A DNA stretch of 64,000 nt from Mytilus californianus (lineage: Eukaryota), in contig NW_026262723.1 of the NCBI RefSeq assembly GCF_021869535.1, positions 92,814,001 to 92,878,000 of the forward strand, in the 5' to 3' direction. Below are positions 13,501 through 43,500 of the stretch, piece by piece (positions within the stretch are counted from its first letter, which is position 1; every line of letters starts with the position of its first letter). The translations under genes and the position numbers were made by a program. Below the pieces are notes generated by a model that made no database searches, was not told the DNA's origin, and worked only from the letters and a program-made list of their open reading frames with translations.

Positions 13501-16500
13501 TCTAATGATTTTTATCCTTACTTTTCAAAGATTTGCAGAAAGTTGTGTTCTTTATATGTGACGTCATCAGGCATGGTCACCTTTTTTCATGACGCCACAA
13601 TAGGAAAATTCAGAAGAAACCAAGAAAATTTGACGTCATAATTAAATTTCGACCAATCATTTGCTGAGAACAGACATTTCACTAGTGAGGAGAAATATTT
13701 TTCTCACACCGATCAAGAAATGTGAAAATGGCACAAAAATTAGAGAAAAATATTTATATCAGCCCATACTGTTGTCAGGGAAATGGAAGACTATCTTGTA
13801 CAGAATTTAGAAAACAATACATTTTTGGACAAAGGAAATATTTTGCTTTTTAGGGGTTTATCTGTTCTTTTGAGGTAAAAGGGGTATTAGTAGGATACTG
13901 TTTCCATTGGGAAGGCCTAATTGCACCTATTATTCACCTGCATGTTAAAGAAATATCTATTAACATAAATGTATAGTACATTTATTTTACTCCTAATTTT
14001 TATATTTCTGATTTTATAATGATAGTAAGTGGAATTATTTTGGAATAATTTTTATTTTAAAAACTATTTCATATAGATTTTGTTATTTTAATTGGAAAGA
14101 AATAAAGTGAAAGTTTTAATCTCAGGGTATTAACAAATTTAAGATACCAATTAAAACAGTTGTATAATCCTGTATTTCAGAATGAGTTGAATAGACTGAC
14201 CTAGATTACTTTGAAATTAATTACAATGTACTATTTCTTTGTAGAGATATTAGCCATAACAAGTTTACCACGTTCCAAACCAATGTATTAAGTTCACTGT
14301 CAAGTTTACAAAAATTGTAAGTTAAATATCCCAAAGCTCAATTACTGTTATGGACTGAAAACTCAATACAAAGTAATGCTGACACACACAAAAATTCAAA
14401 TTCACAAATGATACTTTCAGTTAGAGCACTTCACCTCCCTGGCATCTTCCATAAGTAATGCTGACACACAAAAATTCAAAGTCACAAATGATACTTTCAG
14501 TTAGAGCACTTCACCTCCCTGGCATCTTCCATAAGTAAGTCATACAACAAACAAAATAGATGGACAATCCAAGAGATTGCTTTAAAGGCTTAAGAATACT
14601 GTAGTCTTTTATAAATCAGCATAACCCCAAAATCAATGAAAATTTTATTCTCCATGAATAATGATGAATCCACTGTATATCTTATGCAGATTTAAATGTC
14701 AAATTATTCTTAGGTCAAGTTACTCATTTTCATGCATGCATAAATAGATGTGAATATAAACAACAGGACCAATCAGAGGTGAACTATTTATATACCGGTA
14801 GATAAATGAAGACAATAATTCTTAGAAGTTGTTGATGATTTATATTTTGTTTCTGACTCGACAAACCACAAAGTAAATTGTTGCTTTTTCTTTTATCCTT
14901 TTAAGATGTTTGGTACACAGAATCCATACATTGCAGGATATCCCAAAAAGTTGTATTTTTGCCTGACAGATATTGAAATGATAATTGGCTAATTTTGTTT
15001 ATGATAAAGTAACATGCTGGGGACTGTTAAATAACAAAATCAGTGCTCTTCTGAATTCTGCATTTAGGAATAAAGAATTTTTAATCCGGTGGCCTAAGTC
15101 CAATTTTAATATGAAAATAAGGAGATGTGGTATGATTGCTAATGAGACAACTATCCACCAAAGTTCAAATAAAGTGTAAGCAATTATAGGCAACCATACA
15201 GCCTTCAACAATGAGAAAACCCATACAGTCAGGACTTGCAAATATTACTTTTTTAAGACCCTTGATGCATAAATCCTTGTATCCAGCTAACTTTAAGTCA
15301 TTTTAAAATATCACAGAATTTGAATTGGGCAGCCATATTTATACATAATAACATACTCTTATGATTACAGAAATATAGCAAACAATCCATTTGACTGCAC
15401 CTGTGATTTATTGTCTTTCCGTAATGAACTAGTCACGCTTGAAACATCAAGAAATGTGGAGTTTGAAGATAGAAATGATGTCAACTGTTCCAATGCTCCT
15501 TCAGTCAACCTCCTGGATCAGGCATCAGAAAGGTTTTGGTGTAAGCATGTACTATATAATCTCTATTATGAATGATTGGCATGCATTGAAATCTATGCAT
15601 ACAAATATACTATTATTATTATAGCATGCTGAAGTAAAGATCTTGAACAAAAGTAGATTAATTAGCCAGAGAATTTTTATTTTAGAATTTTTGTTCAAGT
15701 TCTTCTTTTTATGATATAGCAATGAAATAAGGATTTCTATAAATTACATAAATTATATAGTTGTATAGTTAATACATGTACATACAGTTTGCTTTCTCCT
15801 CTATTTCATTGCTATATTGTATATAAGATATGTAAAATATGCACAAAATAATGAATCAAATATATAAACTGACATCACTTTCCCTATAAATACAAGTGTC
15901 CACATTAAAAAAAATAATCACTGTTTTTCCTTAAAGCTTATTGTGGTCATTATAAGACATGTTTTATTATCGTTTTTTTTAATGGTTTTTCACTCTTTAA
16001 TTTGATAGACTTAAGTAGCTTATAAACTTGTTGGCTCTAGGAAAATCATCTATTTAAGATGATAGAATAACAAGAGTGTTGGTAGTTCCAACAGGTTAAA
16101 AGTTAACATATTTTTAACTTTGTATAAAAATTATGTTGAAAAAACGAATTTTTGTCAGTGCATTCCATTATTTCAGAGTTTTTAGCATATTATATATTTA
16201 TTTTACTTTTATTACAAAGGAAGAATGGGAGTTTGCCATTCTGTTTTATTCCCCCATAAAACTTTGAAGAAGAAATTTAAAAGCCTGTGAAAAAATTGAC
16301 TCATATAGGATAAATATGAAGTTAACCTGTAAAAAGGGGAATAACTCCAAATGTTAAAGAAAATTTTTAATAAAAATAAATTTGGAATGAGTTTGGCTTG
16401 TCAGCTATATTTCTAAAGCCATCAAGTTAAAGAAATTTGAATAGCATTAGTTTTAATGAAAAATCCATAAATTTGTAGCTTGCCAACATTCCATCCAGCG

Positions 16501-22500: not shown

Positions 22501-25500
22501 ACTATCATAATTAAAAGTAGTGCTAGTTTATAGCTTATGGGAGCAGTGTAGGATTCAGTGTGTGTTTTTCTTCAATTTGATTTCACTGGATTTAAGTTAT
22601 GATAAATTAATAGATTTTAAATATGCAAAAAAGTTTAAATTTCAGCTAACAACAAAAAGGGTTACTTAAGTATAATGGTAGGTTTGTCATCTTCAAGATT
22701 TTAAATGTACATGATTAATTGTCTATTAGTGACTAATTTTGAAAATGAATACATTACAGTAATTGAGACTACAGTACTCTTGAAAATCTGACATCAAAGG
22801 AATAAATATGATAAGAACTGTACTTCTTGGTTACAAAAATTTCAGTTAGTGTTGAAATTGATTGAAGACTCCAGGAATAGTTGTTGCCCCCGAATTACAC
22901 AAAAATTTGGCATGGACATCAATTGTTTTTTAATTTCAATTCTTGCTAGGAGAAAAAAATTTAAGAAAAAAAAACTGTTAACCGTAAAGGAATAAATTAT
23001 TATCTCCTGTAGATGCTTCAATATTAGATTGTGTATTTCTTGTCTGTAGGTCCTGGGCGACTTGGTTCCTGTTACTTTGATGCAGAGGACAAGGTCAAGT
23101 ATGATGTTTTATTTACAAACACAGAAACTGCAACAGACAATCAAACTTGTATTGAGAAGTGTTTTGACAACAATTCAACATTTGGTATTTTTGAAGACAG
23201 TTTATGTATGTGTGGATACAAACACATAGATTCCAGTAATGAATGCTGGTGTGCATCAAAGGCTTATGTTGATGGGAGTAACATGGCTTGTGTTGACTCA
23301 ACATCAACTAATATTGTCTATGTCAGTACTGTGTATCCTATTTCTGCAGGACTAACAATTGTCCCTTTTGATCGAGTAACGGCAGGACAAAGTCAGACAT
23401 TTACAGCTGAAGTTCAGTTATCGACCATAGTTCAATATATATGGTCATTTGGCGACTCTAGTGAGAGTACATCAGGAACGTCATCCAGCATGACATATAC
23501 CAATAGCCACACATATGCAACAGCTGGGACATACACCATGACAGTTATGGCATGTACCACCAATTCAGCATGTGCCTCCCTATCTGTGTTAGTAGAGGTA
23601 CGGCCATTATTTTCATCAGACAGTATAGATATCACATGTCCGTCATCGTCGCCATCACTGTCATCAACAATAACAGTGACAGGAACCATCAGTGCTGGAT
23701 ACAATACAGAATACAAGTGGACTAAACTACCTACTGATAATGTCACAGCTATTACAGGTATGTGATATAAATAGAATTGAGGTATACATCATAGTCAATG
23801 AATATAAGTCAAGTTGGGGTTGTTGTTGCCATTTTTAGGTAACTGTATGTGAACAAACTATATATTTACAAAAGTACAAAAATGTAATAAAAATACCAGG
23901 ATAATACTACAAAATTAGAAAAAAAATAAGAATTAACTATGCAAACTTCAGAAACAACATATAATTAGTATACTTGGGTAGTATGCATCTGACTTGTCAA
24001 ATTATATTGTATTGATTTCTAACATTTTTTAATTAGGGCCCCGCCGAATGGCGGACACCCTATAGTGATCAGTCTGTCTGTCCGTCTGTCTGTCCGTCCG
24101 TCTGTCCGTCTGTCCGTCCTTAACAAATCTGGAGAACCGTTATGATTTCAAAGTTTATACTTGACATGTTTATTAACCAACACCAGAGGGTGTGTCATAA
24201 TGAATGTACAACTTCCTAGGTCAAAGGTCAATGTCAAAAACTTTGGTTTTAGTTGACAACCCCATGTCCTATGGTAAAGATCATGTCCGCTCTATATCTT
24301 GAGAACCGTTATGATTTCAAAGTTTATACTTGACATGTATATTAACCAACACCAGAGGGTGTGTCATAATGTATGTACAACTTCCTAGGTCAAAGGTCAA
24401 GGTCAAAAACTTTGGTTTTAGTTGACAACCCCATGTCCTATGGTAAAGATCGTGTCCGCTCTATATCTTGAGAACTGTTATGATTTCAAAGTTTATACTT
24501 GACATGTATATTAACCAACACCAGAGGGTGTGTCATAATGTATGTACAACTTCCTAGGTCAAAGGTCAAGGTCAAAAACTTTGGTTTTAGTTGACAACCC
24601 CATGTCCTATATTAAAGATTGTGTCCGCTCTAAATATTGAGAACCGTTATGATTTCAAAGTTTATACTTGACATGTATATAAACCAACACCAGAGGGTGT
24701 GTCATAATTTATGTACAACTTCCTAGGTCAAAGGTCAAGGTCGTAAACTTCAGTTTCATTTGACAACCCCATGTCCAATGATAAAGATACAAATTTTTTA
24801 CCACACATTATTCACAGCGGGGCCCACAGAGATGGCTCCCATCTCAATGATATCTAGTTTTTCCAACTTGCCAGAATTTTCAATATGGTTATGAGCGAGA
24901 CACTAGACACAATTAGATTTAAATAATTCATGGGATGAATTTTGTTTAACAATGTGAACATGCATAATAAAACCGTTCTGATATTATATATTAGAGATAG
25001 ATGAATACTGGCAGCTTTGACCACTTGTCTTGGCAGAGAAAACAATTCTTTTCTGATGTTTTATTCCTTTCCTGGAATAACAACTTTCAGTTTACTGAAT
25101 TGATAAATACCGGTAAACCTTTCAAATGAGAATAAAACATGGTCTTGATATAAAAATAAGAAGATGAGGTATGATTGCAAATGAGACAACTCTCCACAAG
25201 AGACCAAATGACACAGACATTAACAACTATAGGTCATTGTACAGCCTTCAACAATGAGCAAAGCCCACACCGCATAGTCAGCTATAAAAGGCCCCGAAAT
25301 GACAAATGTAACAAACGACAACCACTGAATTACAGGCTCTAAAGCATTAATTTATTTAAAGTAGCCACAAATATTTAGTATTTAAGTAAGCAATTTGATT
25401 GTACATGTAACAACATATATCATATTATTAACTTGCTAATATGCTTATTACTGCTTTCAGATTACTGGTATTTTATTAATTCACCATAGAAAGGTCAAAA

Positions 25501-28500
25501 TGTATTTATATTTTATATTAATAAATTAATGGGTATTATTGATTTAATAAGGACAATGTTTAACAAACATTGGCTAATAGCTTTCAATCAAATAAAATTG
25601 TCTGAATTTTTTATTTTCAGAAGGCCAGTGTGAGGCAACATGGGACTTCTTTAGAGGTCGGTGCCTTCAAGCTCTACTATCTTCTTACACCTACAGTGGA
25701 GCCACATCAACTTGTAATGGTGGCCATTTACTGACTATACACTATACACAGGAGATAACTGATGTCCTCAGCCAATATTCATGTATGTATTATGTTATGA
25801 CCTATGTCCTCAGCCAATATACATGTATGTATTATGTTATGACCTATGTCCTCAGCCAATAAACATGTATGTATTATGTTATGACCTATGTCCTCAGCCA
25901 ATATACATGTATGTATTATGTTATGACCTATGTCCTCAGCCAATATACATGTATGTATTATGTTATGACCTATGTCCTCAGCCAATATACATGTATGTAT
26001 TATGTTATGACCTATGTCCTCAGCCAATATACATGTATGTATTATGTTATTACCTATGTCCTCAGCCAATATACATGTATGTATTATGTTATGACCTATG
26101 TCCTCAGCCAATATACATGTATGTATTATGTTATTACCTATGTCCTCAGCCAATATACATGTATGTATTATGTTATGACCTATGTCCTCAGCCAATATAC
26201 ATGTATGTATTATGTTATGACCTATGTCCTCAGCCAATATACATGTATGTATTATGTTATGACCTATGTCCTCAGCCAATATACATGTATGTATTATGTT
26301 ATGACCTATGTCCTCAGCCAATATACATGTATGTATTATGTTATTACCTATGTCCTCAGCCAATATACATGTATGTATTATGTTATGACCTATGCCCTCA
26401 GCCAATATACATGTATGTATTATGTTATGACCATTCCTTGATGACTGGTTTGTTCTTGAAGCTATTATAGAAAGGGTTACTACATAGAAATAAGACGTGG
26501 TATGAGTGCCAATGAGACAACTCTCCATCCAAGTCACAATATGTAAAAAGTAAACAATTATAGGTCAAAGTACGGCCTTCAACATGGAGCCTTGGCTCAC
26601 ACAACACAGCAAGCTATAAAGGGCCCCAAAATGACTAGTGTAAAACAATTCAAACAGGAAAACCAACAGTCTAATCTATATAAAAAATGAGAAACGAGAA
26701 ACACGTATGAACCACATCAACAAACGACAACCACTGAACAGGCTCCTGACTTAGGACAGGTGCATACAAATGTATGTATTGTTTTTTTTACTGGCAAATC
26801 CAGAGACAGCTTTATCAATAATAGATGTTAATGAGACAGCAAGTATACGTATAAAAAATAATTATATGTGGTATTAGGGCCAATGCGACAACTATCCACC
26901 AGAGTCCAATTATCCTGATGATATGAAAAAGGAGTAGGTCCAGTAAGACTCCTTTTTGGCTCCAAAATATAGCTGTTTTACAAAATTGTTAAAATGTAAC
27001 TTTTTAGTTATTTATTGGAAAGTAGAATACTTCTGCTACATAAATATGGGCTGTTTTTGACAATATAATGCACATATATCGGGTACTAGCATCATTTAGT
27101 CATGCTAAATTACTGAATTCTACACAATTTTAGCATTTGAGTTAAATTTTAGACGGTTTCCATCTTAAATGGAAGTGGCCGCATTTGTGTTCATTCTTAA
27201 TATTTAAATGTAAGTTGTATTTGATGATAATACATAACATATATAAAGGTTGAGAGTGAACAAGGATGCAGCCACTTTCATTTTTGACAAAAACCATCTG
27301 AAAATGTACATATTATGGCATATTTGATAGATTTTTCATATTTAAGCTTGAATTTGAGCGACTGAAATGACTAAATCAGTTCAAATCTTTCACGAAAAGT
27401 AATTGAATCAACTGAAGTAGTGTTTAAAAAGTGTCCAAAATCTTTCATCAGATGAACCTGAAATTTGATGCCAACATCGGCCCTTACCGGTCCTACTCCT
27501 TTGTTTTTTTCCAACACTTATAATATATGGCTATACTTAGGAAAAGATTTCCTAAAGTAATGCCGTAAACAGTGCAGGAAGACACAATCCTTAGGGAAAA
27601 TGCAGTAACAATAAGAGAAATATTGTACCTGGTAGTCTTATTTTCAAACTATAAACTTCCAACAATTATATTTGCAACTACTCTAATTGAAAAATTTGAA
27701 AGAAAAAAGAGTAAAATATTTACTAATAGTTTGACATTATTGTTCAGCTTTTTCGACAATACTACTTGGTGCAACTAAAGATGGTAATGGATACAAATGG
27801 ACCAATGGGAATAAAGCTTACTTCATGGCAGCTGATGTTACAGACTCATCTGTTGGTGGATGTGTTGTGATTGACAGGACCAGTGGAGCATTGAAAGGCA
27901 TTGATTGTTCTTCTTCTCACAGTATTCTTTGTCAAGAAGGTAAATATTTATACTTTGTAATTTTTAGAAGCATTCAAGGTCAAATAACTGTGCAAATAGA
28001 TATAAGAAGATGTGGTATGAGTGCCAATGAGACAACTCTCCATCAAAGTAGTATTATATTATAATGCCAGAAAAGAAAGGAGTACTGGGCATAAAATCAG
28101 AAATCCAGAGGAAAATAACAAGCTTTGAAAAAGTTAACATCACTAAAAAGTTAGCAATCAAACTCACACAAACACCTGAACAAGTAAACAACACTGAAAA
28201 CTTAAATAAAAAACAACTTGCACAAACACTTGAACAAAGTAAACAACACTGAAAACTTATTTAAAAAACAACTTGCACAAACACTTGAACAAAGTCAACA
28301 AAACTGAAAACTTATTGAAAAAACAACTTGCACAGACACTTGAACTAAGTAAACAACACTGAAAACTTATTTAAAAAACAACTTGCACAAACACTTGAAC
28401 TAAGTAAACAACACTGAAAACTTATTTAAAAAACAACTTGCACAAACACTTGAACAAAGTGAACAACACTGAAAACTTATCAAACAAACTATGGTCTATC

Positions 28501-31500
28501 ACAGACACTTCAAGAAGATGTAGAAGAAGAATTAATATATTTTGAAGTTGTTATAAAAGGTAGCCTTTGTTACATGGAAAAACTATTTACAGAAATTCAG
28601 AATAGCAGTAGTAAGTTTGTAGCATTGAATACTACATTTATGTAATGTAATTTTCACTTGCATGACATATAAATACCACATACATTAACATATATATTGT
28701 CAAGTCTAAAAAAAACCAAACAAAATGTGTCCTTAATTTCACACTGAAATCATCAATTTTAATTCTTTTGTAAAGGAGATCATTTTACTTTTTTAGCTTT
28801 AAAACTCCATTAGAAGATCATAGATATTTTAGAGGTTTTTCAATCTTAACTAGCATTTAAGAAAATTGGTTCATATTTCACTTTTTGCAAAAATGTTTAA
28901 ATTTTTTCTTATTATCACTTCTGTTGCTCATGGTTAACCACTTCTTCCTGTCAGGCTTAGAAAGAAAAGCCTCCTCCCTAATTCTGGAGTAATGGTAGCC
29001 CTGATATAATTATTGTTAAGAATAAACCAGTTTGACTACAACAACATATCTCCATCCATGGGGACATGTGAGTGGGCATCAGATGATTGGTGATAACTAT
29101 TATAATAAGTTGGATCATTTGATTTTATATTTCATCCTAAATGATATCAGTATTCAAATGAAATGTGCACTTGCTTTAGAATTCAAAAGATATATGATAT
29201 CAGTATTTAGATGAAATGTGCACTTGCTTTAGAATTCAAAAGGTATATGATATCAGTATTTAGATGAAATGTGCACTTGCTTTATAATTCAAAAGGTATA
29301 TGATATCAGTATTCAAATGAAATATGCACTTGCTTTATAATTCAAAAGGTATATGATATCAGTATTCAAATGAAATGTGCAATTGCTTTAGAATTCAAAA
29401 GGTATATGATATCAGTATTCAAATGAAATGTGCACTTGCTTTAGAATTCAAAAGGTATATGATATCAGTATTCAAATGAAATGTGCACTTGCTTTAGAAT
29501 TCAAAAAGTATATGCTATCAGTATTCAAATGAAATGTGCACTTGCTTTAGAATTCAAAAGGTATATGCTATCAGTATTCAAATGAAATGTGCAATTGCTT
29601 TAGAATTCAAAAAGTATATGATATCAGTATACAAATGAAATGTGCACTTGCTTTAGAATTCCAAAGGTTACATACTAGAAGGATAACACATTAGCCACAC
29701 TCTATGTATTAACACATCTAACTATGTATACCTGTTCTCTAACCTTGGTCTGCATCTGTAGAAATCAACTGATGACCTTGACATATTTGACCTATTCTGG
29801 TTATTTTTGACAAACAAACATAGTGATAGTTAATTAAAATAAAAAAATTGAAGAAATTATGGCTGTTAAAATTGAATTCATGTGCATATTGACCTAGTAA
29901 TATTAACCCAAATAGTGGAAAGTTATGCATCAATAGTCATTTGTTAAAAGAATTCTGGATACATGACTGACAGGAAGTGACTTATAGACGACTTTCGAAT
30001 TGGTGCACTTTCTCATTATTTCCACATGTCACAATGCTTATATGATTACATCACAGTAAGAACCGATTGTTCGATGACGTCATTTACACCTACTGACCCT
30101 GGGTCGAACGATGTAACTCATTCATAAAAAACAACTCAAGATTGGTGTTTTGCATAAAGTAAAGAATTTTATAACACAAACTAGCTATAAATTAATGGTT
30201 ACTTATTCAACATTTTATTATAAAATGTAGAAGGTCCAGTAACAACAACACTTTACGGAATGCTCCAGTAATTTATTAAGATCGACATGTTTCAGTGGTT
30301 AGGCCACCGTCATCAGGATAGAAAACAATACATAAAATCATGCTGAGGTACAAAATCGGGTTGAGAAAATTAAAACGTCACAATGTTGCTATGGTGAGTA
30401 ACGTTATAAATAGCAATTGAAAGAGAAAGTGAAAGTAAGTATATATAGAAGTGAACTATTAAAATAAAATAAAATAAAATAAAATAAAAATACAATGTTT
30501 TTGTTGTTAAAATGTTTGTTAAAATTGTTCTGCCATCATGTGTTAGCATTCTTGCACAGTGGAACGAATTATACAATAAATTATTGTCAGTTGTGTTCTG
30601 TGTAAACTTTGTGTTCAATTAACGTCGTTATTTCCAAATATAGACGACATTTTACTGGCAATTCCGTACCATTTCGAATGGCTTCCCTTGGCCAGAGGTA
30701 CTACTTCCAATCGCGTCGGGAATGCTGTAAAGTGTTTGACCGCCAAAGGTATAGGGAAAATTAAATGAAATGATATCGCTGGTCTATGATGAATGTAAAT
30801 GTTGTGTTCCTCCATTAAACTATCGGAAGTGGCTGGTAATCTTGTAATCTGGTAAACTTGGTAGTATGTATGATTAACGTATTTTCTGGAACTTACTTCA
30901 AAGTCAATTTCTTAATAAGAAGTCTGGTGCATATAATTGCCAATAAATTCTGTAAGAGAAAAATAGTCTTATCACATTTCTTTTCCTCCTTTGCACTCGT
31001 TTTTGGTTGAGATGTTTCATCATAATTTACTTTCTTTGCGCCTGTTGAATGCCTGATAGCATTTTAGGAAGGCCGGTTCCTGTTGGTGCCTCAATGATAT
31101 AATTGTTTGTTTTACTACTACTGTGCAAGAATGCTAACACATGATGGCAGAACAATTTTAACAAACATTTTAACAACAAAAACATTGTATTTTTATTTTA
31201 TTTTATTTTATTTTATTTTAATAGTTCACTTCCATATATACTTACTTTCACTTTCTCTTTCAATTGCTATTTATAACGTTACTCACCATAGCAACATTGT
31301 GACGTTTTAATTTTCTCAACCCGATTTTGTACCTCAGCATGATTTTATGTATTGTTTTCTATCCTGATGACGGTGGCCTAGCCACCGAAACATGTCGATC
31401 TTAATAAATTACTGGAGCATTCCGTAAAGTGTTGTTGTTACTGGACCTTCTACATTTTATGTTTTTATCGTAACGACCCTGCATACCCGAGGTATCCACT

Positions 31501-34500
31501 TTATGGAATCTACTGACAGAAGATTTACCAGGCGTTGGTTCACTTGTGTTGTAATTTTATTATAAAGATGAAAAGTCTTACTTTACATAGCAATTAAGTT
31601 TTTGTTCTTATTTTTTAGTTCCAAATACAGAATGTTTTGATGGTGGACATTATTACTCGGATAACAATCACTGTTACAAGTTATATGAGACCAATGTTAA
31701 TTGGTCTGTGGCGGCCAGTAACTGTCAATTATTGACCAATCAGTCACAGTTAGCTGTTATAGACTCTCTTTCTCTGAAGACTTTTATCATAACCTATGTG
31801 TTTGGAAGGTAAGTTTGAAGTTGGATACAATGGAGGTTTACAGATGATTTCAAAATTACACATTTTATGACTTTAAGTTCATTTATTTTTGTGGACACAT
31901 CAGTTTTTATGAGTTAACCAAATTTGGTTCAATTTAAATTGATTTCATAATTTAAAATTTGCTCCAACTGAAAAACTGCTCATATGTATACCATTGAGGG
32001 TTTGAAATTCATTTCTTGTCAACTGGGACATGTATATTGTGGAAACCAGAAAATAATGTGTAACTTTTTTCATTTTGTTATCCAAAGAATTCTTAAGAAC
32101 TATATTTATTACAGATCATTCATGATGAAGGCAATTCAGTGTTGATGTTTTACTCTGATCATTTCTTCTAGACTCGAAGAAATTTAAAGTTTTCCATATG
32201 ATTTTAAGATTTGTTCCGTGTTGATGACATGGTGAAATTTGTAAATATAAATGTAAAAAAAAACCAATTCGTAGAAATCCACTTTTATGAAATTTTATTG
32301 TTGGATTACTTGGTAACAATTTTGCATTTATACAAATGTTTTCGTGATATGACATATATTTGATACAAAAGATACAACTGTAACAAACTTTGCCAAAGAA
32401 CATTGTGAATATTGTTGAATTTAATTTGAACTAAACTGAGAATAAAATAGATTTATTTCTTTTAGTGTGACTCAGTCAGCTTGGATTGGTCTTACAGACA
32501 AGGTGTCAGAATCTTACCTGATGTGGACAAACAACCAATCAGTAGTGAACTACAATCCTGTTGGCACTGCCCCAGAAACAGACTGCATAACAGTAGACAA
32601 AACTGGTTCCTGGTCTCACTACAGTTGTCAAGAATCTAAATACTATATTTGCCAATATTCTTTAAGAGGTAGTTAATTTTATTGTAAAAATAGTGAAAAA
32701 TGATTCATGAATGCCAGAGTCTTACTTATACATTTGCCAGTATTGTTTAAGAGATATTTTAGAGTAAAACAGTTGACAAAAGTGGTTCTTTGTCTAACCA
32801 TAGACAAATCTGGTTTCAGATTACTGTTATTCTATAAGAGATATTTAACTTCCAATCAGTACAAATGTAATATATATTGTATGTCACTAAAATATTTCTG
32901 TTACTTTGTCCCACCCCAGTTCAACCAAAGGTACTGCATGAAACTTTTTCTAAATCTAATTATTTTATTGCTAATCTTGATGTAACAATCTTAGAAATTT
33001 GTCTTTCAAATATTTTCTTTGTTTACGATGAGAATGGTGTTGGAATGTCTTCATATCCCTTCTTTTTTTCAGAAACTGTAAAGATACCAACATACCTAGC
33101 AGGGATTGGTCGTTTGGTATCAACTGGGTCAACATATAGCTTGACTTCAATAGCTTCCACCAGCTTGCCAGCCAATACTGTATCCATAACAAACACGTTT
33201 CCAGGTGTGTATTCACAACTAATTGTTGTTCATATAAATATTTCTTCAACAAAATACATTGCTAAGTAGTTGTTTGCATGTTTTTTCATAATAGACAGTA
33301 GTTTATTACATGCAAGAAAATGGACAAAACATCGTTATGAGTTTGGTTGAAATAAATAATCAATCGTTTCTCTAATACATTTATTAATTACAAAAGTGAG
33401 ACAAGCTTTGTAAGTTAGTTTAAAGCATTTAGAAATCCTTTAATATAATTTTGTGATAATTTTTTGTAGTAAATGCATTTGTTGGTATGTTTTAAATACA
33501 TATTTTTTCTTTAGCTGCATTTCTCATTCTACTGCTTGCTGTTTGCACAAAATACTAGATATGATTTCATAGAGGACAGTCTCATTACCTTAAAATTGAA
33601 TTAATGATAAAGTTTTTAATCATATAAGTAAATGTTGCTCCTCCACAAGGTTAAAACCAAGAAAATTCCACATTTTTGTAGCAAATGGTAGACATACCAG
33701 AAAGTATTTAAAATCGAGTAAAGGAAAAAAAACAAACAAATAAAACCCCAAAACAACAATTAGATTAATACTTTTGTAAGTCAGATGAATTTATTTGTCT
33801 GTCATTAGCATTTGATATATCACTTATAGTTTATAAATTTTATAACCTTCTTTATTAAAGTAGATACAATACAATGTCTACATCCACTTTATTTGAACTT
33901 TGGTGGATAGTTGTCTCATTGCCAATCATACCACATCTCCTTATTTTTATATCTATAATTTTTTTCCATTACAAAATCTATTACCTTACTGTTGAGAAAA
34001 ATGCTGCATTTTTTATTTATTGAAGTGAATCGTCCTTTTGCCTGTTATAAATCAGCTACTTACAGTATAAAGACTCAGATCTTAATTGACTAGGATTGGC
34101 AGTTACCTGCTGAATGTTGGTGATTCTCTCCGGGCACTCAGGCTTCCTCCACCAATAAAAACTGGCCACCACAACATAGCCAATAGTGCTGAAAGTGGTG
34201 TTAAACATCAACAGTCAATCAATTATATAGTATAAAGAATAATTTCTACCTTTTGTGACATTTAATGAAAACATTGGCATACCATATTCCCAATTTTAAT
34301 GGATGATAACATCTTTTTTAGCTCATCTGGCCCTATGGCCATCACCTGGTGTCTATTGTCATAGTAGTCATCATTGTCTTTGTTGTTGTAAACTTTTTAA
34401 AAATCTCCTGTGAAATCACTGGACCAATTTAATTGACTGATCCTTTGGTTATCTAGTATAAAGTTTGTGTTATTTTTTCCTTCCAAGTTCCAGTCAACCA

Positions 34501-37500
34501 ACATGGCTTCCATGGCTAAAAAAAGCATTACAGTAAAATGCATTAATTGTCATATCTTGAAAACCATTATCATTAGAAAAAATCTAGATGAGTAAAAGCT
34601 GTGAACACCTAAAATGATCAGCAATAGAAGAAGACCTAAAATAATCGTCAGAGGAACGAACTTTAAGATGAGTCCTTATAGGAGCTATTGTCTTTAAATG
34701 ATAATTATTGATGAATATTCAAGTTTTTTACTGTTTTCTTAACTACCTTTAATAGATAGGTAAAAACTTTAAACCGCAAGAATGTATGCCATTAAATGAT
34801 GATATTTTTAATAATTTTGTAGTTTTTGCCTTTTACCTCAAAAACTGTAACAGATAAGTAAAAAACTATAAACTACAAAATTGATCAGCAATAGAATATC
34901 TCGGAAAATGCTTACATGACCGAAACAATTGGGTGACTCCTTTTAGGAGTTACTGCCCTTTAAAGACGATTTTGTCTAATTTTCAAGTTTTTGCTTATTA
35001 TAATAAAAACTATAATAGAGATGTAGAATCTGTAAACAGCAAATATTATTAGCAATACAAGATATATTTTTGAAGGTGAGCGATTCAGGTTCATAGGAGC
35101 CCCTTGTTTTACAATGTTGTGTGTTTTAGCTTGTACCTCCTGTGTGACTGTATTTTTCCTTAATTTTGCTTATTAGTAGAAACCAGTAGATATTATCTTT
35201 CCTTCTTAGAATATAAAGAGATGCTTCCTTAAGGATGTATACTGCTGACGTTTCAGTCTCGTTGAAATCTCGTTCTAGAATTATTTCCAAAACATGTGAT
35301 ACAAGTGGAAAATATCAATGAATTCAAAAAATGTTATAATCAAACTTAACTCAGTGAAAAAATTGTGTATTTACAATAAGTAGTTTTTGAGTAATAAATT
35401 GTTCAAATTTTATTACCAATCAAGTCAGTCTTTTTAGCCAAAATTTTGAGAAATGGGTGAGGGGTACAAGAAATGATTTTACCAGAAACATATACAATAC
35501 AACCCATATCACTTTTTTCTTTTCAAATTTCTTAGATATGTATTTTTTCAATCATTTATAACAAAGAAGTTGAAATCATATGCATTTTGCTCTTAAAATA
35601 GAGAAAAATCACAAATTTACAAAATTGACAGCATGGTAAATTTGACACAAAAAAGCATCAAACTATGATAAAACTTTCTTATATTAACACCTACCTATAG
35701 TTTTTTTAAGTTAAATTTATTCAGATTGGTGCAATGCATCTTTATAAAAAGTATGAAAAAAAGTTTAATTGTGGATCTGTGATTTTTTTCATGATAATAG
35801 CACAAAAATGGGTAAAAATTGATGAAAAATGGGAAAATCATCAAAACTGGGTACTTTCAAAGGGCCGTAGCAAAAAAAGAAGTGCACCACCATATGCTTT
35901 TTTCTTCACCAATTATTTTTTTACAGTCATATAAACCCAAAAATCAGGTTAAGAAAAAAAGTTTAATTCTAGAAATTTTTGGCTCCTCAGAGGTGTACAT
36001 CCTTAAGGATATTTAATATTAGCATCAATACCATTTATATAGCCTTTCATGTTACCTACCTACCAATGTTCATAAAGTACTACAGCCTGTCCATTTATGT
36101 CTTTCAACCATTTCTGCAATTTCAGTTGTCAGATGATGGCTTAACCATACCTTCTCCATTTAGCTGTATTTCAATGGCAATTATGTGATCAGCAGCAATT
36201 TATTTTGAAATGTATATTTTTAGAGTAATAAATTGAAAATTTAAGATAGGTAAATATGATAATTTTATAGCATTGCTTTTACTTCTGTTTTATTAATTTT
36301 GATGAGAATTTATGTGATGGTCTTTCATAAAATGTTTTGACTTGTTACTATTATTATGGGAAATTCTATTTCTCTATTTTCTATTTTCAGGATTATGGTT
36401 TTCCCATGGAGGAGAAATACAGCAGTGGAATTTCAGAACCAATGCCTTGACAAAAGATACTGTTATCTCCTTCCAAGTCTACACACCAATATGTTCCTCA
36501 GGAACACTTATAAAACCAGGTATATCTCCTAAATATATTGATATGTTCCTCAGGAACACTTATAAAACCAGGTATATCTCCTAATCAATAGATTGATATG
36601 TTCCTCAGGAACACTTATTAAACTAGGTATATCTCCTAGTGAATATATTGATATGTTCCTAGGAACACTTATAAAATCAGGTATATCTCTTAGTCAATAG
36701 ATTGATATGTTCCTCTGGAACACTTATTAAACTAAGTATATCTCCTAGTCAATACATTGATATGTTCCCCAGGAACACTTATAAAACCAGGTATATCTCC
36801 TAGTCTATACATTGATATGTTCCTCATAAACACTTAAAAAAACAGGTTTATCTCCTAATCAATATATTGATATGTTCCTCAAGTATATCTCCTTCTAGTC
36901 ATTACATCAGTATGTTCCTCATGTATTTTTCCTTCTAGTCAGGACATCAGTGTGTTCCTCAGGTACATGTATGCCTCCTTGTAGGCAATACATTAGTATG
37001 TTCCTCATGTAAATCTCACTATGGAACACTTATAAATTAGATATATCTTCTTCAAAGACAACATACAAAATTATTACTGTGGGACCCATAAGTCTATGCT
37101 CCAATGTGTTTCACAGGATCTTCCAATTTAAAACACCAGTATGCTCCCCAGAAACACTTGCAGAACCAGGCATATCTATTTAGTCTACACACCAGCCTGA
37201 TTCTAAAGAGTACATTTAAAATATTTATAAAAGATGTTAGGTATACTTCAATGAGACAGTAACCCTACAACACAAAAACCAAAACTTATATTATTCGTGG
37301 TTCATCGATCTAGACCAGTTTTTTAGAAACCTAAAAAATGATCTTGATCACAAAGATCTTTAACAATTTAATTATCTGTAATCAGTTAAACAGGCAAGAC
37401 ATTTAACTGTTTCCAAGCTAGTTAAAATCTTAAATATTCATGTATTTTTTGCAATATTGAGTGAAATTACTTTATAAAGTCATAAAAATAAAGACAAGTA

Positions 37501-40500
37501 GCTGATGTTGATTATAATTTTAGATATGTACTAAGAAACTAAAATATTCTTAAATTTAGTTGATGTGAAAACTTTTAGAATTTATGTAAACAACTTTTTT
37601 TTTAGGTTGTGATGGGAATGGTGCCAGATATGCTTCCTGCTCCACTACTGTAACCACCTGTAGTGCTACACCTTATTGTAATGAAGGAAAAGAAAGCTGT
37701 TATCACACCAATGACTGTATCCCAGTCTCTGACCCCTGTAATTGTAACCAGTTAGACACCACAACATATCCATATTGTAGTACACCGTTTGTTGGAGATC
37801 AACCAAAGTATCGACTTGTTGGACAGACTGTAGTTAATCTCCCCAGTGGTCCAGCTGGTTATTTTTCAGTAAATGCTGATGGATTGAAGGTTAGCGAGGG
37901 AGACATCATTGCATTCCAGACAAACAACAGCGTTGATGTTATATTATGTGATAATACTGATTTAACTCTGCTTCAGAATATACTGCAAAAAATCCAAGGT
38001 GCATGGGTGTCTGTTGGTGATGAAGTAGACATGTCATCATCTGCCTCTCCATGGCGTAACAATACAGCATGTTACTTCCAGGCAGTTTATACTATTCCAG
38101 AGACTGTTACATTGCCTCCATCTTTACAGTATTCTACCGTAGCTGGGTCATACACTTATGAGTTAAGTCTTCCAAATGATAACATTGCAAAATCCTGTAC
38201 ATTCACTGTAGAAGAAGAAGTTGGAGATTTTGACTGGATATATCCAATCGTCCAATCAACAAGTGGAGGAACCAGTACATTTTATGTTGAAGCTGATGTT
38301 CAAACATACTTAGTATTTGCAGCTAAGAGAGGTACAAATCTACAGGTTTCATGGTCAGTTGACGGGAATGATTACACATCTACCTTTCAGTCTTCATGTC
38401 CCAGCAGTGTTACATCAGAAGTTGGAACTGCATGTGATAGTAGTAATTACTGGATATCTGAACCATTTGCCTATGTACAATATACATTTTCTTATAACAG
38501 TGGAACTTCTGTACCAGTCATTATCACAGTAAACAATACTGTTGGATCATCTACACAGACATTTGCTAGCCAGGCCTTTCAGCCTCTTTCTCTCGATTTT
38601 AACCTGACAGATTTCAGCAATGGATACCTTGTTGAAATCAATAAGGCCATCGATTTTACAACTTCTGTTGGCAGTGGAAATCCAACAAACTTTGAGTATT
38701 TTGTAAATGGAACTAAAGTGCATACTTCAACATCTTCTGGAACATTCACATATACATTCACTGCTAAAAATTACTATGAAGTATCTGTGGAAATATCAGA
38801 TGGTTTCAAAACAGCTAACAAGTCCATTAGTGTAACAAGTAAATATGCAGCAAATGTCCAAAGTCTAACCTTAGTTGGAGTACCTACTACAGCAGCAGTA
38901 AGCACTGCAGTTCAGTTTCAAATTACTTGCACTGTAAATGCTCAAGCTTATGTTACAGTTCAGTGGGAATTCGAAAGTGGTACAGTTTCAGAGTCATTGG
39001 AAACTACAACAACTTCACTTACTCTTAGCAAATCCCATACACATACAATAAATGGAACATATACATTCAGGTTAACAATCACTGACGACTTTGGTATTGT
39101 AGCAACTCAAACTCAGACAATCCGTGTTGTAGAACACCTTCCATCTGTTTCTTTATCAGCTAGTTCCACATCGATTAGGACTGGATCAAGCATTGATTTT
39201 ATTGCAACAGTTCCTGAAATAGCTTCCAAAGATTATGGAACATTGTCATATACCTTTGATTTTAACGATACAACTACTGAAGTTAGTTCCTCAAAAGAAA
39301 AAATTCACACTTTTGGTACAGCTGGAACCTATTACGTTACAGTTCAAGTTTCAAATCAAGCTGAAATTGTGCAAGATACAGTTATTGTTGGTGTATTTGA
39401 TACAATAACAGGTTTAACAATTACCGCAGACAGAATAGTCCAAGTGTCCACCACAACTTCTATAACTGCATCTGTTACAACAGGAAATGCATTAACATAT
39501 AGCTTTGAAATATCTGACAATGCTTTGTCATCTGGAAATATAACTGACAATGTTTACAATCCATCGTTGTCTAAGACTGGTCACTTCAATATAACCTTGA
39601 CGGCTTGGAATGATCTGAGTAGTGCAACAGTAACCAAGGAACTGTATGTTGTGGATACGACAACTTTAGAAATTATTGGATTCGAACACAATGCCTATCA
39701 AGCTACAAATACTCTGCTTGCTGTTACAGTGGATGTACTGTATTATGATATCAGTGATTTAATCATAACATGGACATTTGATGGTAACCTTGTCAAGGGC
39801 ATTGGAGGTCTTTCAACATCCTATACATTTACAACATCAGGAATCTTCAACTTTACCGTGGTTTTGCAGTCAAGTTCAAATACAGCTGTAGTGGTCAGTG
39901 GTTATTCTACTGTGGAAATACAGGACTCTGTGGCAGGACTAATAGTTTCCAATGATGGTCCGGTGGGACTGGCTTCGACTGGTTCTGCTGTTGTCACAGT
40001 AACAGCATCAACAACAGGTGGTGATAAATTACAATACACATGGGATACGGGAGGAACAGTACAAACAACTACGAGTAACTTTATTACGTTAACTAAATCA
40101 ACGGAAGTTTCCGAAACTGTTGTTGTGATGGTTTGGAATGATGTTAGTTCACAAAATGGGACAACGACATATAAAGTTCAGTATGCTGTTGAAGGGTTGA
40201 AAATTACATGTCTTAATTGTACGGAGAGCAGTGGTGTCACTTATCTACAATCAACAAAAACAGCATCATTTGTTGCCTCCTTGACATCGGGTTCTAACGT
40301 AACATATAACTGGTCGTTTGGTGACGGAGGTACAGGAACAGGAATATCTCAGACTCATTCATATATCTCAGGAGGAACATTTACCATCACAGTGTCAGGT
40401 GTCAATGATGTTGGGACTGTTATAGCAACATTCAATATTACTGTTCAGGAGGAGATAAGCAGTGTTTCAATTAACTGTACAAATAATATCAAATTTGTCA

Positions 40501-43500
40501 ACTCCACATTTACGTTACAAGCCAACCCTGTTGGTGGAAGTGATATCACTTATGCATGGCAGGATTGTGGAACATGTCTTCAGAACTATCAGGCCTCAGA
40601 TGTATACATTACAGGCATTTACTATCAGTCTGGAACTTACATAGTATCAGTCAAGGCATTCAATCAAATAAACTTTGCTGTTCATTCAAAATTTATCACA
40701 GTGATAGATTATATAACTAATGTTACTGTGACTTCTGACTTGATTCAAGGTCAGTATGCTGCAAAAGGTCAGGCTTATACATTTGCTGCTGTAGCAAATA
40801 CTGATAACTCTCATATGTATTATACCTGGAAGGTCAAGACAGGGTCAACAACTATGTACACCTCAACTGTACACACATCCAAAAATTTAACCTACACATT
40901 CACTAATTCTCTACAGTATGAGGTTGAAATCAGAGTTTGGAATACTCTATTTAGTGAATACACTGCTACTGTTGATGTTATGGTAGAAGAAGAAATAACT
41001 GGTGCTTACATCACATTAGATAAGACATCACCCATAGCAACAGGGGAAGTTTTAACAGTCGCTGCTGTGACATCAACTGGAACAGAACTTTCATATAAAT
41101 GGATTCTACAGAATTCAACAGGACAGTATACACTGAATGAAACAGCGAAGTCTTTTACCTATACTTTCAGTGGTAAAGGAGACTATGTGCTTATCTTAGA
41201 AGTGAGTAATGATTTAGGCATGGAGACTGTAAATAAATCCATCAGTGTTATGGAAGCTGTTACCGGTGTAAACATCAGCTCAGTTGTCAATGAATCTTAT
41301 CCATATATTGCTGTAGGCTCATATATCACATTTTCAGCAGTTATTGGCACAGGAGAAAGTTACACAACAACATGGACATTGGCTGACGGTGTTTCTTCAG
41401 CACTAACATTCAGTGGAGTCAATTTTACACACAATTTTACCACATCTGGTACGTTTACAATTACAGTCACGGTACAGAATCTTGTTAGCACTGATACTTA
41501 TTCCTTCATAGTTTATGTTCAAGGTTCTATTGCATCCCTGACCTTGGTGACAAACACAAGTTTGGCTGAGACTGGACAGTCTGTACAATTTACTGCTAAT
41601 TACAACACAGGTGCAGACAATTTGGTGTTTGAATGGACAATAGAAGGAACATTGATTAATGGAACGTCTGATACCTTGTCACATATATTTAACACCGCTG
41701 GAACATTTACAGCTCATATAAAAGTATACAATCATATTAGCCAGATGACAGCTGTAGTTAATGTGGTTGTGGAAGTACGTATTTCTGGTTTCAGTATAAC
41801 AGGTTGCAATGCAGTTCAGGAAATCAACAATGCTGTATCAGCAAGTTTCAACGTATCTCAGGGAACAGATGTAACGTATAGTTACAGACTGGACACGGAA
41901 TCTTCATCCTCCATTACAGGCTCTGGATCTTCAATATCATACACATTTACAACGACAGGACTGTATAATTTGTATGTGAATGCTACCAATCAGGTCAGTC
42001 AGGAATCACTGCAGTGCTTGTTCACAATTATAGGACCTATATCAGGTCTGGCTGTCGATACTTCTAACTCCAATTTTTTTGTGAACTATACAGTACATTT
42101 GCAGGTCACAGGAAATAACCTTATTGGAGTAACTTATAATTGGAGGTTTTCACCAATAAATGAAAATATCACTACATCGGACAGCTTACTACAGAAGATT
42201 TTCACAACATCTGCAACATACCAGTATGAATTAGAAGTCTCAAATGGAATAAGTTCTGCTACAATAACAGGATCATTTTTCATAGTGCCTTTACATTGTG
42301 ATACAATGACTGTGGCAAAGGGAGGTCAGTCAGAAAAAATAAGAAAGAAATCATCAACATCTACTTTCGAAGTGACAGTTGACAAAAAGGGGTGTACATC
42401 TTACACTCTAAAGTATGATTGGAAGGTTTACAATTCTTCGACAGGTTGTGCTGGAACACTCAATAATCAAGTCACTTTAAACTCGGCCACAGTTACAAAT
42501 ACTCCCAAACTAATGCTAGACAGCAGCCATGATATAGGTTCATACTGTGTACAGCTGACCACTTGGTACGATGACACGCCACTAATTCAAACAATTGGAT
42601 ACAACTTGACTGTCATGGATTCTGACCTTATAGCCATTATTGCTGGTGGTAGTAAACTGAAGTATCCACAGTCTGATCCCATTACGGTTGATGGAAGTGG
42701 ATCATTTGATCCTGACAGTAGTTCCACAGTCCTACAGTACAGCTGGGCATGTTCAGTCACTTATCCACTGGTGAGTTAATATACTTTTTTTTTCTATTTA
42801 AATCTTTCAATTATTGACTTTTTCTTCTTCTTGCATTTATTTTAATCTAACCTTTCTCTGAAACTAATTTTTTGTTATAAATCTGAATTTTACATTATTC
42901 TCACCTGCATATATCATTTTAACTTTTATAGTTTTGTAAAGTTTTCACAAATTTCTTACTTGCTTATGAAATGCTAATGCATAACTTGTGTAGAATCAGT
43001 CTAAACAATGAAAACTTGATTATTATTTCCATTACTTCAGTAGTAAGATAAAGAAAACTCAGTAATTGAAAACTCAGTAATTGTTAGATGACATTTGAAA
43101 GAAAAGCAATTTATACCAAAGTTAGAAATAAAAATTGTGTTAATTTTTATCTTAAGCTTCTAATGTAAAGAACATATGCATTTATTGTTTCCTTAATATT
43201 GCTTTAATTATTAAAACTTAACCCTTTCTTGTTTTCTTCATAACCATATGTCTTTGTAGATTCTGTAGTACTGTATTTAAATTAGATTTTGTTCTTAGCT
43301 TTTTATGACAAAACAATATGATTCTTCAAATATGTTTAAAGGTTCATCCCTCCTAAGGCCTCCTTTTTGATTTAATAGATGTTAAGAGCTGCAGATTATA
43401 TGATAGCAAATGCATGTTTTCATTTGCAAATATTTCATTACAGTTTTAGATATTGAAATCAAAATAAGCCAGTATGACTTTATTTGATTTTAACATGTAA

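What the first reader, a model, noticed from the sequence alone, without database searches (positions are those of the whole stretch)
31350..31410. Minimal hammerhead ribozyme in intron 13, sense to the PKD1 pre-mRNA
Seen: CUGAUGA-C-[GGUGG CCUAG CCACC]-GAAA-CAU-GUC|GAU, with a palindromic ACAUGU stem III and a stem I (AUC/GAU, then UAUUG/UAAUA). Predicted cleavage is between 31396 and 31397. The antisense copy differs in this motif only by a loop change and a C-to-U giving a G-U wobble, so the fold is kept. Established: Penelope-like elements carry minimal type I hammerheads with palindromic stem III, often with core variants, that cleave mainly as dimers. Inference: this copy is transcribed with PKD1 and could cut the intron between the two lectin domains. 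The two copies face opposite ways and cannot dimerise in cis, so activity may be low or need a trans partner.
Basis: partly seen in the sequence, partly recalled or inferred. Interest (0 to 1): 0.75.

Follow-up and report, generated by a model that had tools for sequence, protein, structure and literature searches.

The report
Penelope-type minimal hammerhead in mussel intron
The hammerhead ribozyme motif is real, but it is the ordinary minimal hammerhead carried by Penelope-like jumping elements; here it sits in one young, non-coding, inverted-duplicate insertion in an intron of a mollusc polycystin-1-like gene and is unlikely to cut the host RNA.

Summary
The motif is confirmed. A complete minimal type I hammerhead lies at 31364-31396 (+), with the predicted cut after C31396. 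A second copy lies at 30284-30316 (-).

It is not a chance match. The core-only pattern occurs 219 times in this 1.65-Gb genome against 5 for the reversed control. The hits fall into several families with different but complementary stems. All 6 helix II pairs show changes on both sides, one helix I pair switches AU to GC, and 92% of cells pair against 17-40% when partners are slid.

Direct pairs of the same motif about 3.9 kb apart flank RT + GIY-YIG ORFs, that is, autonomous Penelope-like elements (PLEs). Window 31317-31561 is 81% identical to the ribozyme region of one of them.

Both window copies belong to a single insertion (30226-31558, target duplication ATTATAAA) of a non-coding element family with a unit of about 1.14 kb. 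The two copies lie head to head, as is typical of PLEs.

It matches every published feature of metazoan PLE min-hammerheads (PMC4209133), so it is a new member of a known kind. Earlier notes of this scan report similar elements elsewhere in this genome.

Cutting of the host pre-mRNA is unlikely. A monomer cannot form helix III, only one sense copy is present, and the 341-bp inverted repeat is predicted to bury the motif in dsRNA. RNA reads cross the site with no pile of ends. Rfam models find nothing, here or in an autonomous PLE copy.

The parts
31350..31406 (+). Minimal type I hammerhead, sense to the host gene. Helix I 31350-31354/31402-31406 and 31361-31363/31397-31399; core CUGAUGA 31364-31370; extra C 31371; helix II 31372-31386; GAAA 31387-31390; palindrome ACAUGU 31390-31395; predicted cut after C31396.
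30274..30330 (-). Second hammerhead copy (core 30316->30284 on the minus strand). It has G10.1-U11.1 in place of G-C and has lost the sixth helix II pair.
30226..31118 (-). Near-complete non-coding unit of the repeat family: body, hammerhead, and a 58-nt tail after the cut site ending in CTTCTACA. It lacks the first ~180 nt of the 1.14-kb unit.
31120..31558 (+). Inverted partial copy: 3' body, hammerhead, tail and a ~100-nt extension. The part 31317-31561 is 81% identical to the hammerhead/5'-UTR region of an autonomous RT+GIY-YIG element.
30220..30560 (.). Left arm of the 341-nt inverted repeat, 99% complementary to 31120-31460, with 559 nt between the arms.
31120..31460 (.). Right arm of the inverted repeat.
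30217..30224 (.). Left copy of the target-site duplication ATTATAAA. The match extends to 13 nt if the element-end AT run is counted.
31559..31566 (.). Right copy of the target-site duplication ATTATAAA.
27940..31618 (+). Host intron (GT at 27940, AG at 31617-31618) that contains the insertion.
   Evidence: An RNA-seq contig of run X9 joins 27939 to 31619.
37884..42779 (+). Giant downstream exon of the host gene with 9 PKD domains and the start of a REJ domain. It identifies the gene as polycystin-1-like on the + strand.

Best explanation
The motif is the minimal hammerhead ribozyme (min-HHR) that Penelope-like retroelements (PLEs) carry in their terminal repeats. Here it belongs to a non-coding, non-autonomous family with a unit of about 1.14 kb and at least a few hundred copies. 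That family shares its hammerhead/5'-UTR region with an autonomous RT+GIY-YIG PLE of the same genome.

One integration event put a head-to-head pair into a 3.7-kb intron of a mollusc polycystin-1-like gene: a near-complete unit on the minus strand and an inverted partial unit on the plus strand. The event duplicated ATTATAAA.

In the element's own life cycle the ribozyme is thought to work only as a double hammerhead. The palindrome ACAUGU of two sense copies, in tandem units or on two transcripts, forms a 6-bp helix III, and each RNA is cut after GUC. This part is inferred from the literature.

In the host pre-mRNA the single sense copy is most likely inert. It has no partner in cis, and it is predicted to be locked in a ~341-bp duplex with the antisense arm.
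For: Shown here:
- The motif and its second copy are present.
- The core-only pattern has 219 genome hits against 5 for the reversed control, in families with different helix II sequences.
- 92.4% of cells pair against 17-40% when partners are slid by 1-3 columns. All 6 helix II pairs have double changes, and helix I pair 10:48 is AU in 20 and GC in 7 sequences.
- Direct motif pairs ~3.9 kb apart flank ORFs with RVT_1 and C-terminal GIY-YIG (L061 1992-4241, L062 4257-6497).
- Window 31317-31561 is 81% identical to L061 1102-1347.
- The family shows 5'-truncated solo copies, partial tandems (L054, hammerhead period 1143 nt, longest ATG ORF 54 aa) and recurrent head-to-head pairs.
- Among the first 100 genome hits, 12 nearby pairs are (-,+), none is (+,-), and 3 are direct.
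- A target duplication flanks the composite.

From the literature:
- PMC4209133 defines metazoan PLE min-HHRs by a nucleotide between A9 and 10.1, a conserved G10.1-C11.1 pair, a palindromic 15.2-16.2/loop 3, a long helix II and a short helix I. It reports dual motifs 100-700 bp apart on opposite strands and low, dimer-only activity in vitro.
- PMC11167929 found no RNA-seq ends at a PLE hammerhead site and found cleavage dispensable for insertion in vitro.
Against: - No Rfam hammerhead model matches, even at E<=10 on 91 nt. However, the same holds for the motif inside an autonomous PLE, so these models seem unable to detect this architecture.
- No self-cleavage was shown. The RNA reads are few (depth about 10) and come mostly from other copies. 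They cross the site with no pile of ends.
- Nearest-neighbour energies do not favour the active fold: the double hammerhead is -21.0 kcal/mol against -34.7 for the dimer MFE, and the monomer without helix III is -7.2 against -15.0 for the monomer MFE.
- Covariation rests on about six related families, so the independent events are few.
- Within this family (85-99% identity) no compensatory change is seen, and the hammerhead region varies about as much as the element body (0.028 against 0.032 per site).
Confidence: 0.85

Rival explanations
1. The sense hammerhead is active on the host transcript. It cuts the polycystin-1-like pre-mRNA in this intron by pairing in trans with transcripts of other family or PLE copies, and so affects mRNA yield.
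For: The motif is complete and lies in sense within a spliced intron. Related PLE transcripts with the same ACAUGU palindrome are present in RNA-seq; reads carry the compensatory 31376 G>C / 31382 C>G pair.
Against: There is only one sense copy in the intron. The predicted 341-bp duplex with the antisense arm buries the motif. No ends pile up at 31396/31397. Published min-HHRs cut poorly even as dimers (PMC4209133). The host exons are spliced across the intron. A cut inside an intron need not change the mRNA.
Confidence: 0.06
2. The locus is a foldback or MITE-like DNA transposon with 341-bp terminal inverted repeats, and the hammerhead-like string is a passenger.
For: It has a long, 99% identical inverted repeat with a short spacer, flanked by an 8-bp duplication.
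Against: Most family copies are solo and variably 5'-truncated, or in head-to-tail partial tandems. None is a paired TIR element. The two arms end at different points of the unit: the plus arm carries a ~100-nt extension that the minus arm lacks. The ribozyme region is homologous to an RT+GIY-YIG element.
Confidence: 0.04
3. The family is a non-LTR retrozyme in the strict sense. Its tandem units would be cut at each hammerhead and ligated into abundant circular RNA, as described for mussel 350-390-nt repeats.
For: Partial tandems with a 1143-nt hammerhead period and no ORF exist. Mussels express retrozyme circRNAs (PMC7229834). A 2026 preprint argues that animal retrozymes derive from PLE terminal repeats (10.64898/2026.07.22.740005).
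Against: The unit is about three times longer than described metazoan retrozymes. The ribozyme is the minimal PLE type, not the canonical type I with a helix III hairpin. No back-splice-like joints or ends were seen in the reads (tables 5 and 6). Only 1.1-1.4-unit arrangements were seen, not long arrays.
Confidence: 0.05

Closest known systems
Minimal hammerhead ribozymes (min-HHRs) of metazoan Penelope-like elements (Cervera and De la Pena 2014, PMC4209133)
   Same: Conserved core boxes; one unpaired nucleotide between A9 and G10.1; a G10.1-C11.1 pair; a palindromic 15.2-16.2 plus loop 3 (ACAUGU); a long helix II (6 bp); a short helix I with an ill-defined loop 1; many sequence families per genome with compensatory changes; location in the repeated region next to RT+GIY-YIG ORFs; dual motifs a few hundred bp apart on opposite strands.
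   Different: This copy sits in a non-coding derivative with a ~1.14-kb unit, not in an autonomous element. This particular mollusc family is, as far as I could see, not individually described. Activity is untested.
Metazoan non-LTR retrozymes, including the Mytilus galloprovincialis 350-390-nt repeats (PMC7229834)
   Same: Non-coding, hammerhead-bearing, head-to-tail repeated, and probably mobilised by PLE enzymes.
   Different: The unit is about 1.14 kb instead of 170-400 nt. The hammerhead is the minimal PLE type instead of the canonical type I. Only partial tandems and inverted pairs were seen, and there is no circRNA evidence here.
Intronic hammerheads of amniotes (HH9/HH10, RF02275 and RF02277)
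   Same: A hammerhead lying in sense inside an intron of a protein-coding gene.
   Different: Those are single-copy, ultraconserved and monomer-competent, with full helices. This one is a young transposon copy (arms 99% alike), dimer-dependent, and not matched by those models.

Membership tests
Hammerhead ribozyme, type I | Conserved core C3-U4-G5-A6-N7-G8-A9, G12-A13-A14, A15.1-U16.1 and H17 at the cut site | tested here: met
   CUGAUGA 31364-31370, GAAA 31387-31390, U31395, C31396. The same core is present in the minus copy.
Hammerhead ribozyme, type I | Helices I and II supported by covariation, with helix I open (type I) | tested here: met
   Alignment A2 of 29 genomic copies chosen by core boxes only: 92.4% of cells paired against 17-40% when slid; 6 of 6 helix II pairs have double changes; one helix I pair is AU in 20 and GC in 7 sequences. 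These represent few independent families.
Hammerhead ribozyme, type I | Match to the curated Rfam covariance models (RF00163 and relatives) | tested here: not met
   No hammerhead hit at gathering score or at E<=10. The same motif inside an autonomous PLE also gives none, so the models seem unable to detect this minimal architecture.
Hammerhead ribozyme, type I | Site-specific self-cleavage | tested here: inconclusive
   RNA reads at depth about 10, mostly from other copies, cross 31396/31397, and no pile of ends was reported.
PLE minimal hammerhead (PMC4209133) | [quoted passage not shown] | tested here: met
   C31371. In genomic copies it is C in most, and U or A in some.
PLE minimal hammerhead (PMC4209133) | Conserved G10.1-C11.1 pair and a long helix II | tested here: met
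   G31372-C31386, with a 6-bp helix II and a CUA loop. The minus copy has G-U.
PLE minimal hammerhead (PMC4209133) | Palindromic 15.2-16.2 and loop 3, so that helix III forms only in a dimer | tested here: met
   ACAUGU at 31390-31395. The monomeric 2-bp/2-nt-loop hairpin is rejected by the energy model, while a nested double-hammerhead structure is allowed.
PLE minimal hammerhead (PMC4209133) | Residence in the terminal repeat of an RT + GIY-YIG element | tested here: met
   This holds for sister families: L061 and L062 have the motif on both sides of RVT_1 + GIY-YIG ORFs. The window copy is in a non-coding relative that shares 250 nt at 81% identity with L061.
Metazoan non-LTR retrozyme | Short (170-400 nt) tandem units with a canonical type I hammerhead, expressed as circRNA | tested here: not met
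   The unit is about 1143 nt, the hammerhead is of the minimal type, and only partial tandems were seen. No circular joints appear in the reads, but depth is low.
Foldback / TIR DNA transposon | All copies bounded by the same paired inverted termini | tested here: not met
   Most copies are solo and 5'-truncated or in direct partial tandems.

The most novel reading that the evidence does not exclude
The insertion is not neutral for the host. The sense minimal hammerhead, or more plausibly the 341-bp near-perfect inverted repeat around it, acts on the polycystin-1-like pre-mRNA. Possible routes are trans-dimer cleavage with abundant PLE transcripts, long intronic dsRNA that attracts editing or small-RNA pathways, or altered splicing between the two lectin-domain exons.
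Probability: 0.05. Interest if true: 0.55.

Novelty: new member of a known kind. Interest (0 to 1): 0.2.

Why it matters
The result shows that the flagged ribozyme is ordinary transposon cargo, not a host regulatory device. It also documents, in one mollusc genome, a clean set of min-hammerhead families with compensatory stems. These link autonomous RT+GIY-YIG Penelope-like elements to a non-coding derivative with a ~1.14-kb unit. That fits the recent proposal that animal hammerhead-bearing non-autonomous elements descend from PLE terminal repeats. It is also a practical warning: Rfam hammerhead models do not detect this class, so scans that rely on them will miss it.

Tried and rejected
- Rfam scans of the whole window at gathering score, of 1.2 kb at E<=10 and of 91 nt at E<=10 gave only noise hits (snoRNA, sRNA, riboswitch) and no hammerhead. 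The same was true for the motif in an autonomous PLE.
- I looked for compensatory changes within the 32 copies of the window's own family. There are none: the copies are too alike, and changes in helix II are single-sided. Covariation appeared only when other families were brought in by a core-only pattern.
- I tested for lower variability of the hammerhead than of the element body among copies. The difference is negligible (0.028 against 0.032), as expected for dead-on-arrival copies.
- I looked for RNA ends or circular joints at the cut site in three raw RNA-seq runs and one contig set. None were found, but depth is low and the reads are mostly from other copies.
- Pfam on the half-lectin exon gave no Lectin_C hit, so the lectin reading of the flanking exons rests on inspection only.
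- My first dimer structure, with intramolecular helix I, was a pseudoknot and could not be scored. I replaced it with the nested double-hammerhead topology.
- The TIR-transposon reading was rejected on copy structure.
- The large protein searches, structure prediction and the metagenome and viral scans were not used. Nothing in the question depended on them.

Full report
**Observation**

- CUGAUGA at 31364-31370
- one unpaired C at 31371
- helix II GGUGGC/GCCACC with a CUA loop at 31372-31386
- GAAA at 31387-31390
- the palindrome ACAUGU at 31390-31395
- GUC ending at 31396

By the hammerhead rule the cut falls after C31396.

Proximal helix I is AUC/GAU (31361-31363 with 31397-31399). The distal UAUUG/UAAUA pairing is also there. 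Its G-U is a G-C in most family copies.

A core-only pattern finds exactly two matches in the window against 0.00 expected. The second lies at 30284-30316 on the minus strand. One removes a possible sixth helix II pair. The other turns G10.1-C11.1 into G-U.

**Host context**

The + strand carries a polycystin-1-like gene. A 1631-codon open exon at 37884-42779 has nine PKD domains and the start of a REJ domain, and further PKD and REJ exons flank it.

An RNA-seq contig from a mollusc sample (run X9) covers 31617-31762. Its upstream loose end matches 27908-27937 of the window. The intron is therefore 27940-31618, with GT and AG at its ends, and the plus-strand motif is sense to the pre-mRNA.

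The exon ending at 27939 looks like the C-terminal end of a C-type lectin domain, and the exon from 31619 looks like the start of another. This is by eye only, because Pfam did not reach threshold on the half-domain. The intron number could not be checked.

**What the two copies are**

The window holds a 341-nt inverted repeat, 30220-30560 against 31120-31460. It is 99% complementary, with 559 nt between the arms.

The repeat belongs to a dispersed family with at least 338 first-look candidates in this 1.65-Gb genome. Most copies are solo and variably truncated at the 5' side.

Comparison with longer copies shows that the near-complete unit in the window lies on the minus strand, 31118 down to about 30220. 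The plus copy is an inverted partial unit that also carries a ~100-nt extension, to about 31558.

At other loci the same extension lies upstream of the full unit. These are head-to-tail arrangements of 1.1-1.4 units. In L054 the two hammerheads are 1143 nt apart, and the unit has no ATG ORF above 54 codons. The window composite has none above 66.

The composite 30226-31558 is flanked by ATTATAAA on both sides (30217-30224 and 31559-31566). The element ends were fixed by comparison with other copies. It is therefore one integration event, not two insertions.

**Link to Penelope-like elements**

A genome-wide search used a pattern that fixes only the core boxes and the palindrome. It gives 219 hits against 5 for the reversed control.

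The hits fall into families whose helix II differs but stays complementary: GGUGGC, GGUGCC, GCCGAU, GCCGC, GCCUGC and GCCAC, each with its matching 3' strand.

[quoted passage not shown] Examples are L061 1992-4241 and L062 4257-6497. This is the defining protein of endonuclease-bearing PLEs.

Window 31317-31561 is 81% identical to the hammerhead region of L061, 1102-1347, which lies between the cut site and the first ORF.

Among the first 100 listed hits, twelve nearby pairs are minus-then-plus (head to head, as in the window). None is plus-then-minus, and three are direct. In L062-L064 the minus member is a truncated inverted element next to a full one.

**Structure support**

I aligned 29 non-identical genomic copies, motif plus 12 nt on each side (A2). 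I then counted pairs for the hammerhead structure:
- 92.4% of cells form standard pairs, against 17.8-40.4% when partners are slid by 1-3 columns.
- No shuffle out of 500 reaches the observed pairing or covariation score.
- All six helix II pairs show changes on both sides.
- Helix I pair 10:48 is AU in 20 sequences and GC in 7.

Helices I and II were not part of the search pattern. The caveat is that the sequences come from about six families, so the independent events are few. Within the window's own family there are no compensatory changes.

**Comparison with the literature**

Cervera and De la Pena (PMC4209133) describe metazoan PLE min-HHRs with these features:
- a nucleotide between A9 and 10.1
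- a conserved G10.1-C11.1 pair
- a palindromic 15.2-16.2 and loop 3
- a long helix II and a short helix I
- many families per genome full of compensatory changes
- dual motifs 100-700 bp apart on opposite strands
- no cleavage as monomers and only weak cleavage as dimers

Every sequence feature is met here.

PMC7229834 notes that mussels hold both retrozymes with canonical type I hammerheads and autonomous PLEs with atypical variants. A 2026 preprint argues that animal retrozymes derive from PLE terminal repeats and are depleted from introns in vertebrates.

PMC11167929 found a PLE hammerhead dispensable for insertion in vitro and saw no RNA-seq ends at its site.

**Does it act on the host RNA?**

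- The hammerhead-competent monomer without helix III scores -7.2 kcal/mol, against -15.0 for the MFE, which pairs part of the core.
- A nested double-hammerhead of two sense copies scores -21.0, against -34.7 for the dimer MFE.
- Folding 30200-31480 as one RNA gives -684.7 kcal/mol, with every base of the motif but one paired to the antisense arm.
- Three raw RNA-seq runs and one contig set gave depth of about 10 over the motif. The reads were mostly 90-99% alike, so they come from other copies. They included reads with the compensatory 31376 G>C / 31382 C>G pair of the autonomous family. The reads cross 31396/31397, and no pile of ends or joints was reported.

This does not exclude rare cleavage, but nothing supports it.

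**Rfam**

No hammerhead model matches at gathering score or at E<=10, even on 91 nt. The motif inside the autonomous PLE L061 fails in the same way. The negative result therefore seems to reflect the models, which do not detect this minimal architecture, more than the sequence.

**Verdict**

This is a real, well-supported minimal hammerhead of the known PLE class. It sits in a young single insertion (three differences in 341 nt between the arms) of a non-coding PLE derivative in an intron. It is a new member of a known kind.

Earlier notes of this scan report similar hammerhead-bearing PLE-type elements elsewhere in this genome. I did not test those loci.

The suggestion that it cuts the polycystin-1-like pre-mRNA is not supported.

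Noticed in passing
L061 271-954 and 4198-4881; L062 6502-7161: The autonomous PLEs carry a further ORF of 219-227 codons with C2H2/BED-type zinc-finger hits. It lies directly after, or slightly overlapping, the RT+GIY-YIG ORF and about 190 nt upstream of the hammerhead. Its role and its relation to the main ORF (separate ORF, frameshift or read-through) were not examined.
   Followed up: no
G000:C1:2443867-2443941 (L031): Two identical min-hammerheads lie head to head only 42 nt start to start. This is the extreme case of the minus-then-plus arrangement. Among the first 100 genome hits, 12 nearby pairs are (-,+), none is (+,-), and 3 are direct.
   Followed up: partly
window 31376 and 31382: RNA-seq reads in two species labels carry G>C at 31376 together with C>G at 31382. 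This is the compensatory helix II pair of the autonomous GGUGCC family, which shows that family is transcribed.
   Followed up: partly
window 25629-26558, 10191-11333, 29032-29773, 28127-28544, 36477-36934: The introns of the gene are full of tandem arrays with periods of 42, 46, 53 and 55 nt, each of 6-17 copies.
   Followed up: no
window 15119-15179, 25158-25218, 26489-26549, 26860-26920, 28004-28064, 54213-54273: A dispersed ~61-nt repeat (core GTGGTATGA.TGCCAATGAGACAACTCTCCA) occurs six times, often next to the tandem arrays. From memory it resembles a common bivalve interspersed repeat. This was not tested.
   Followed up: no
window 31181-31228 and 30452-30499: An (ATTTT)n microsatellite sits inside both arms of the element, and its length varies between family copies.
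   Followed up: no
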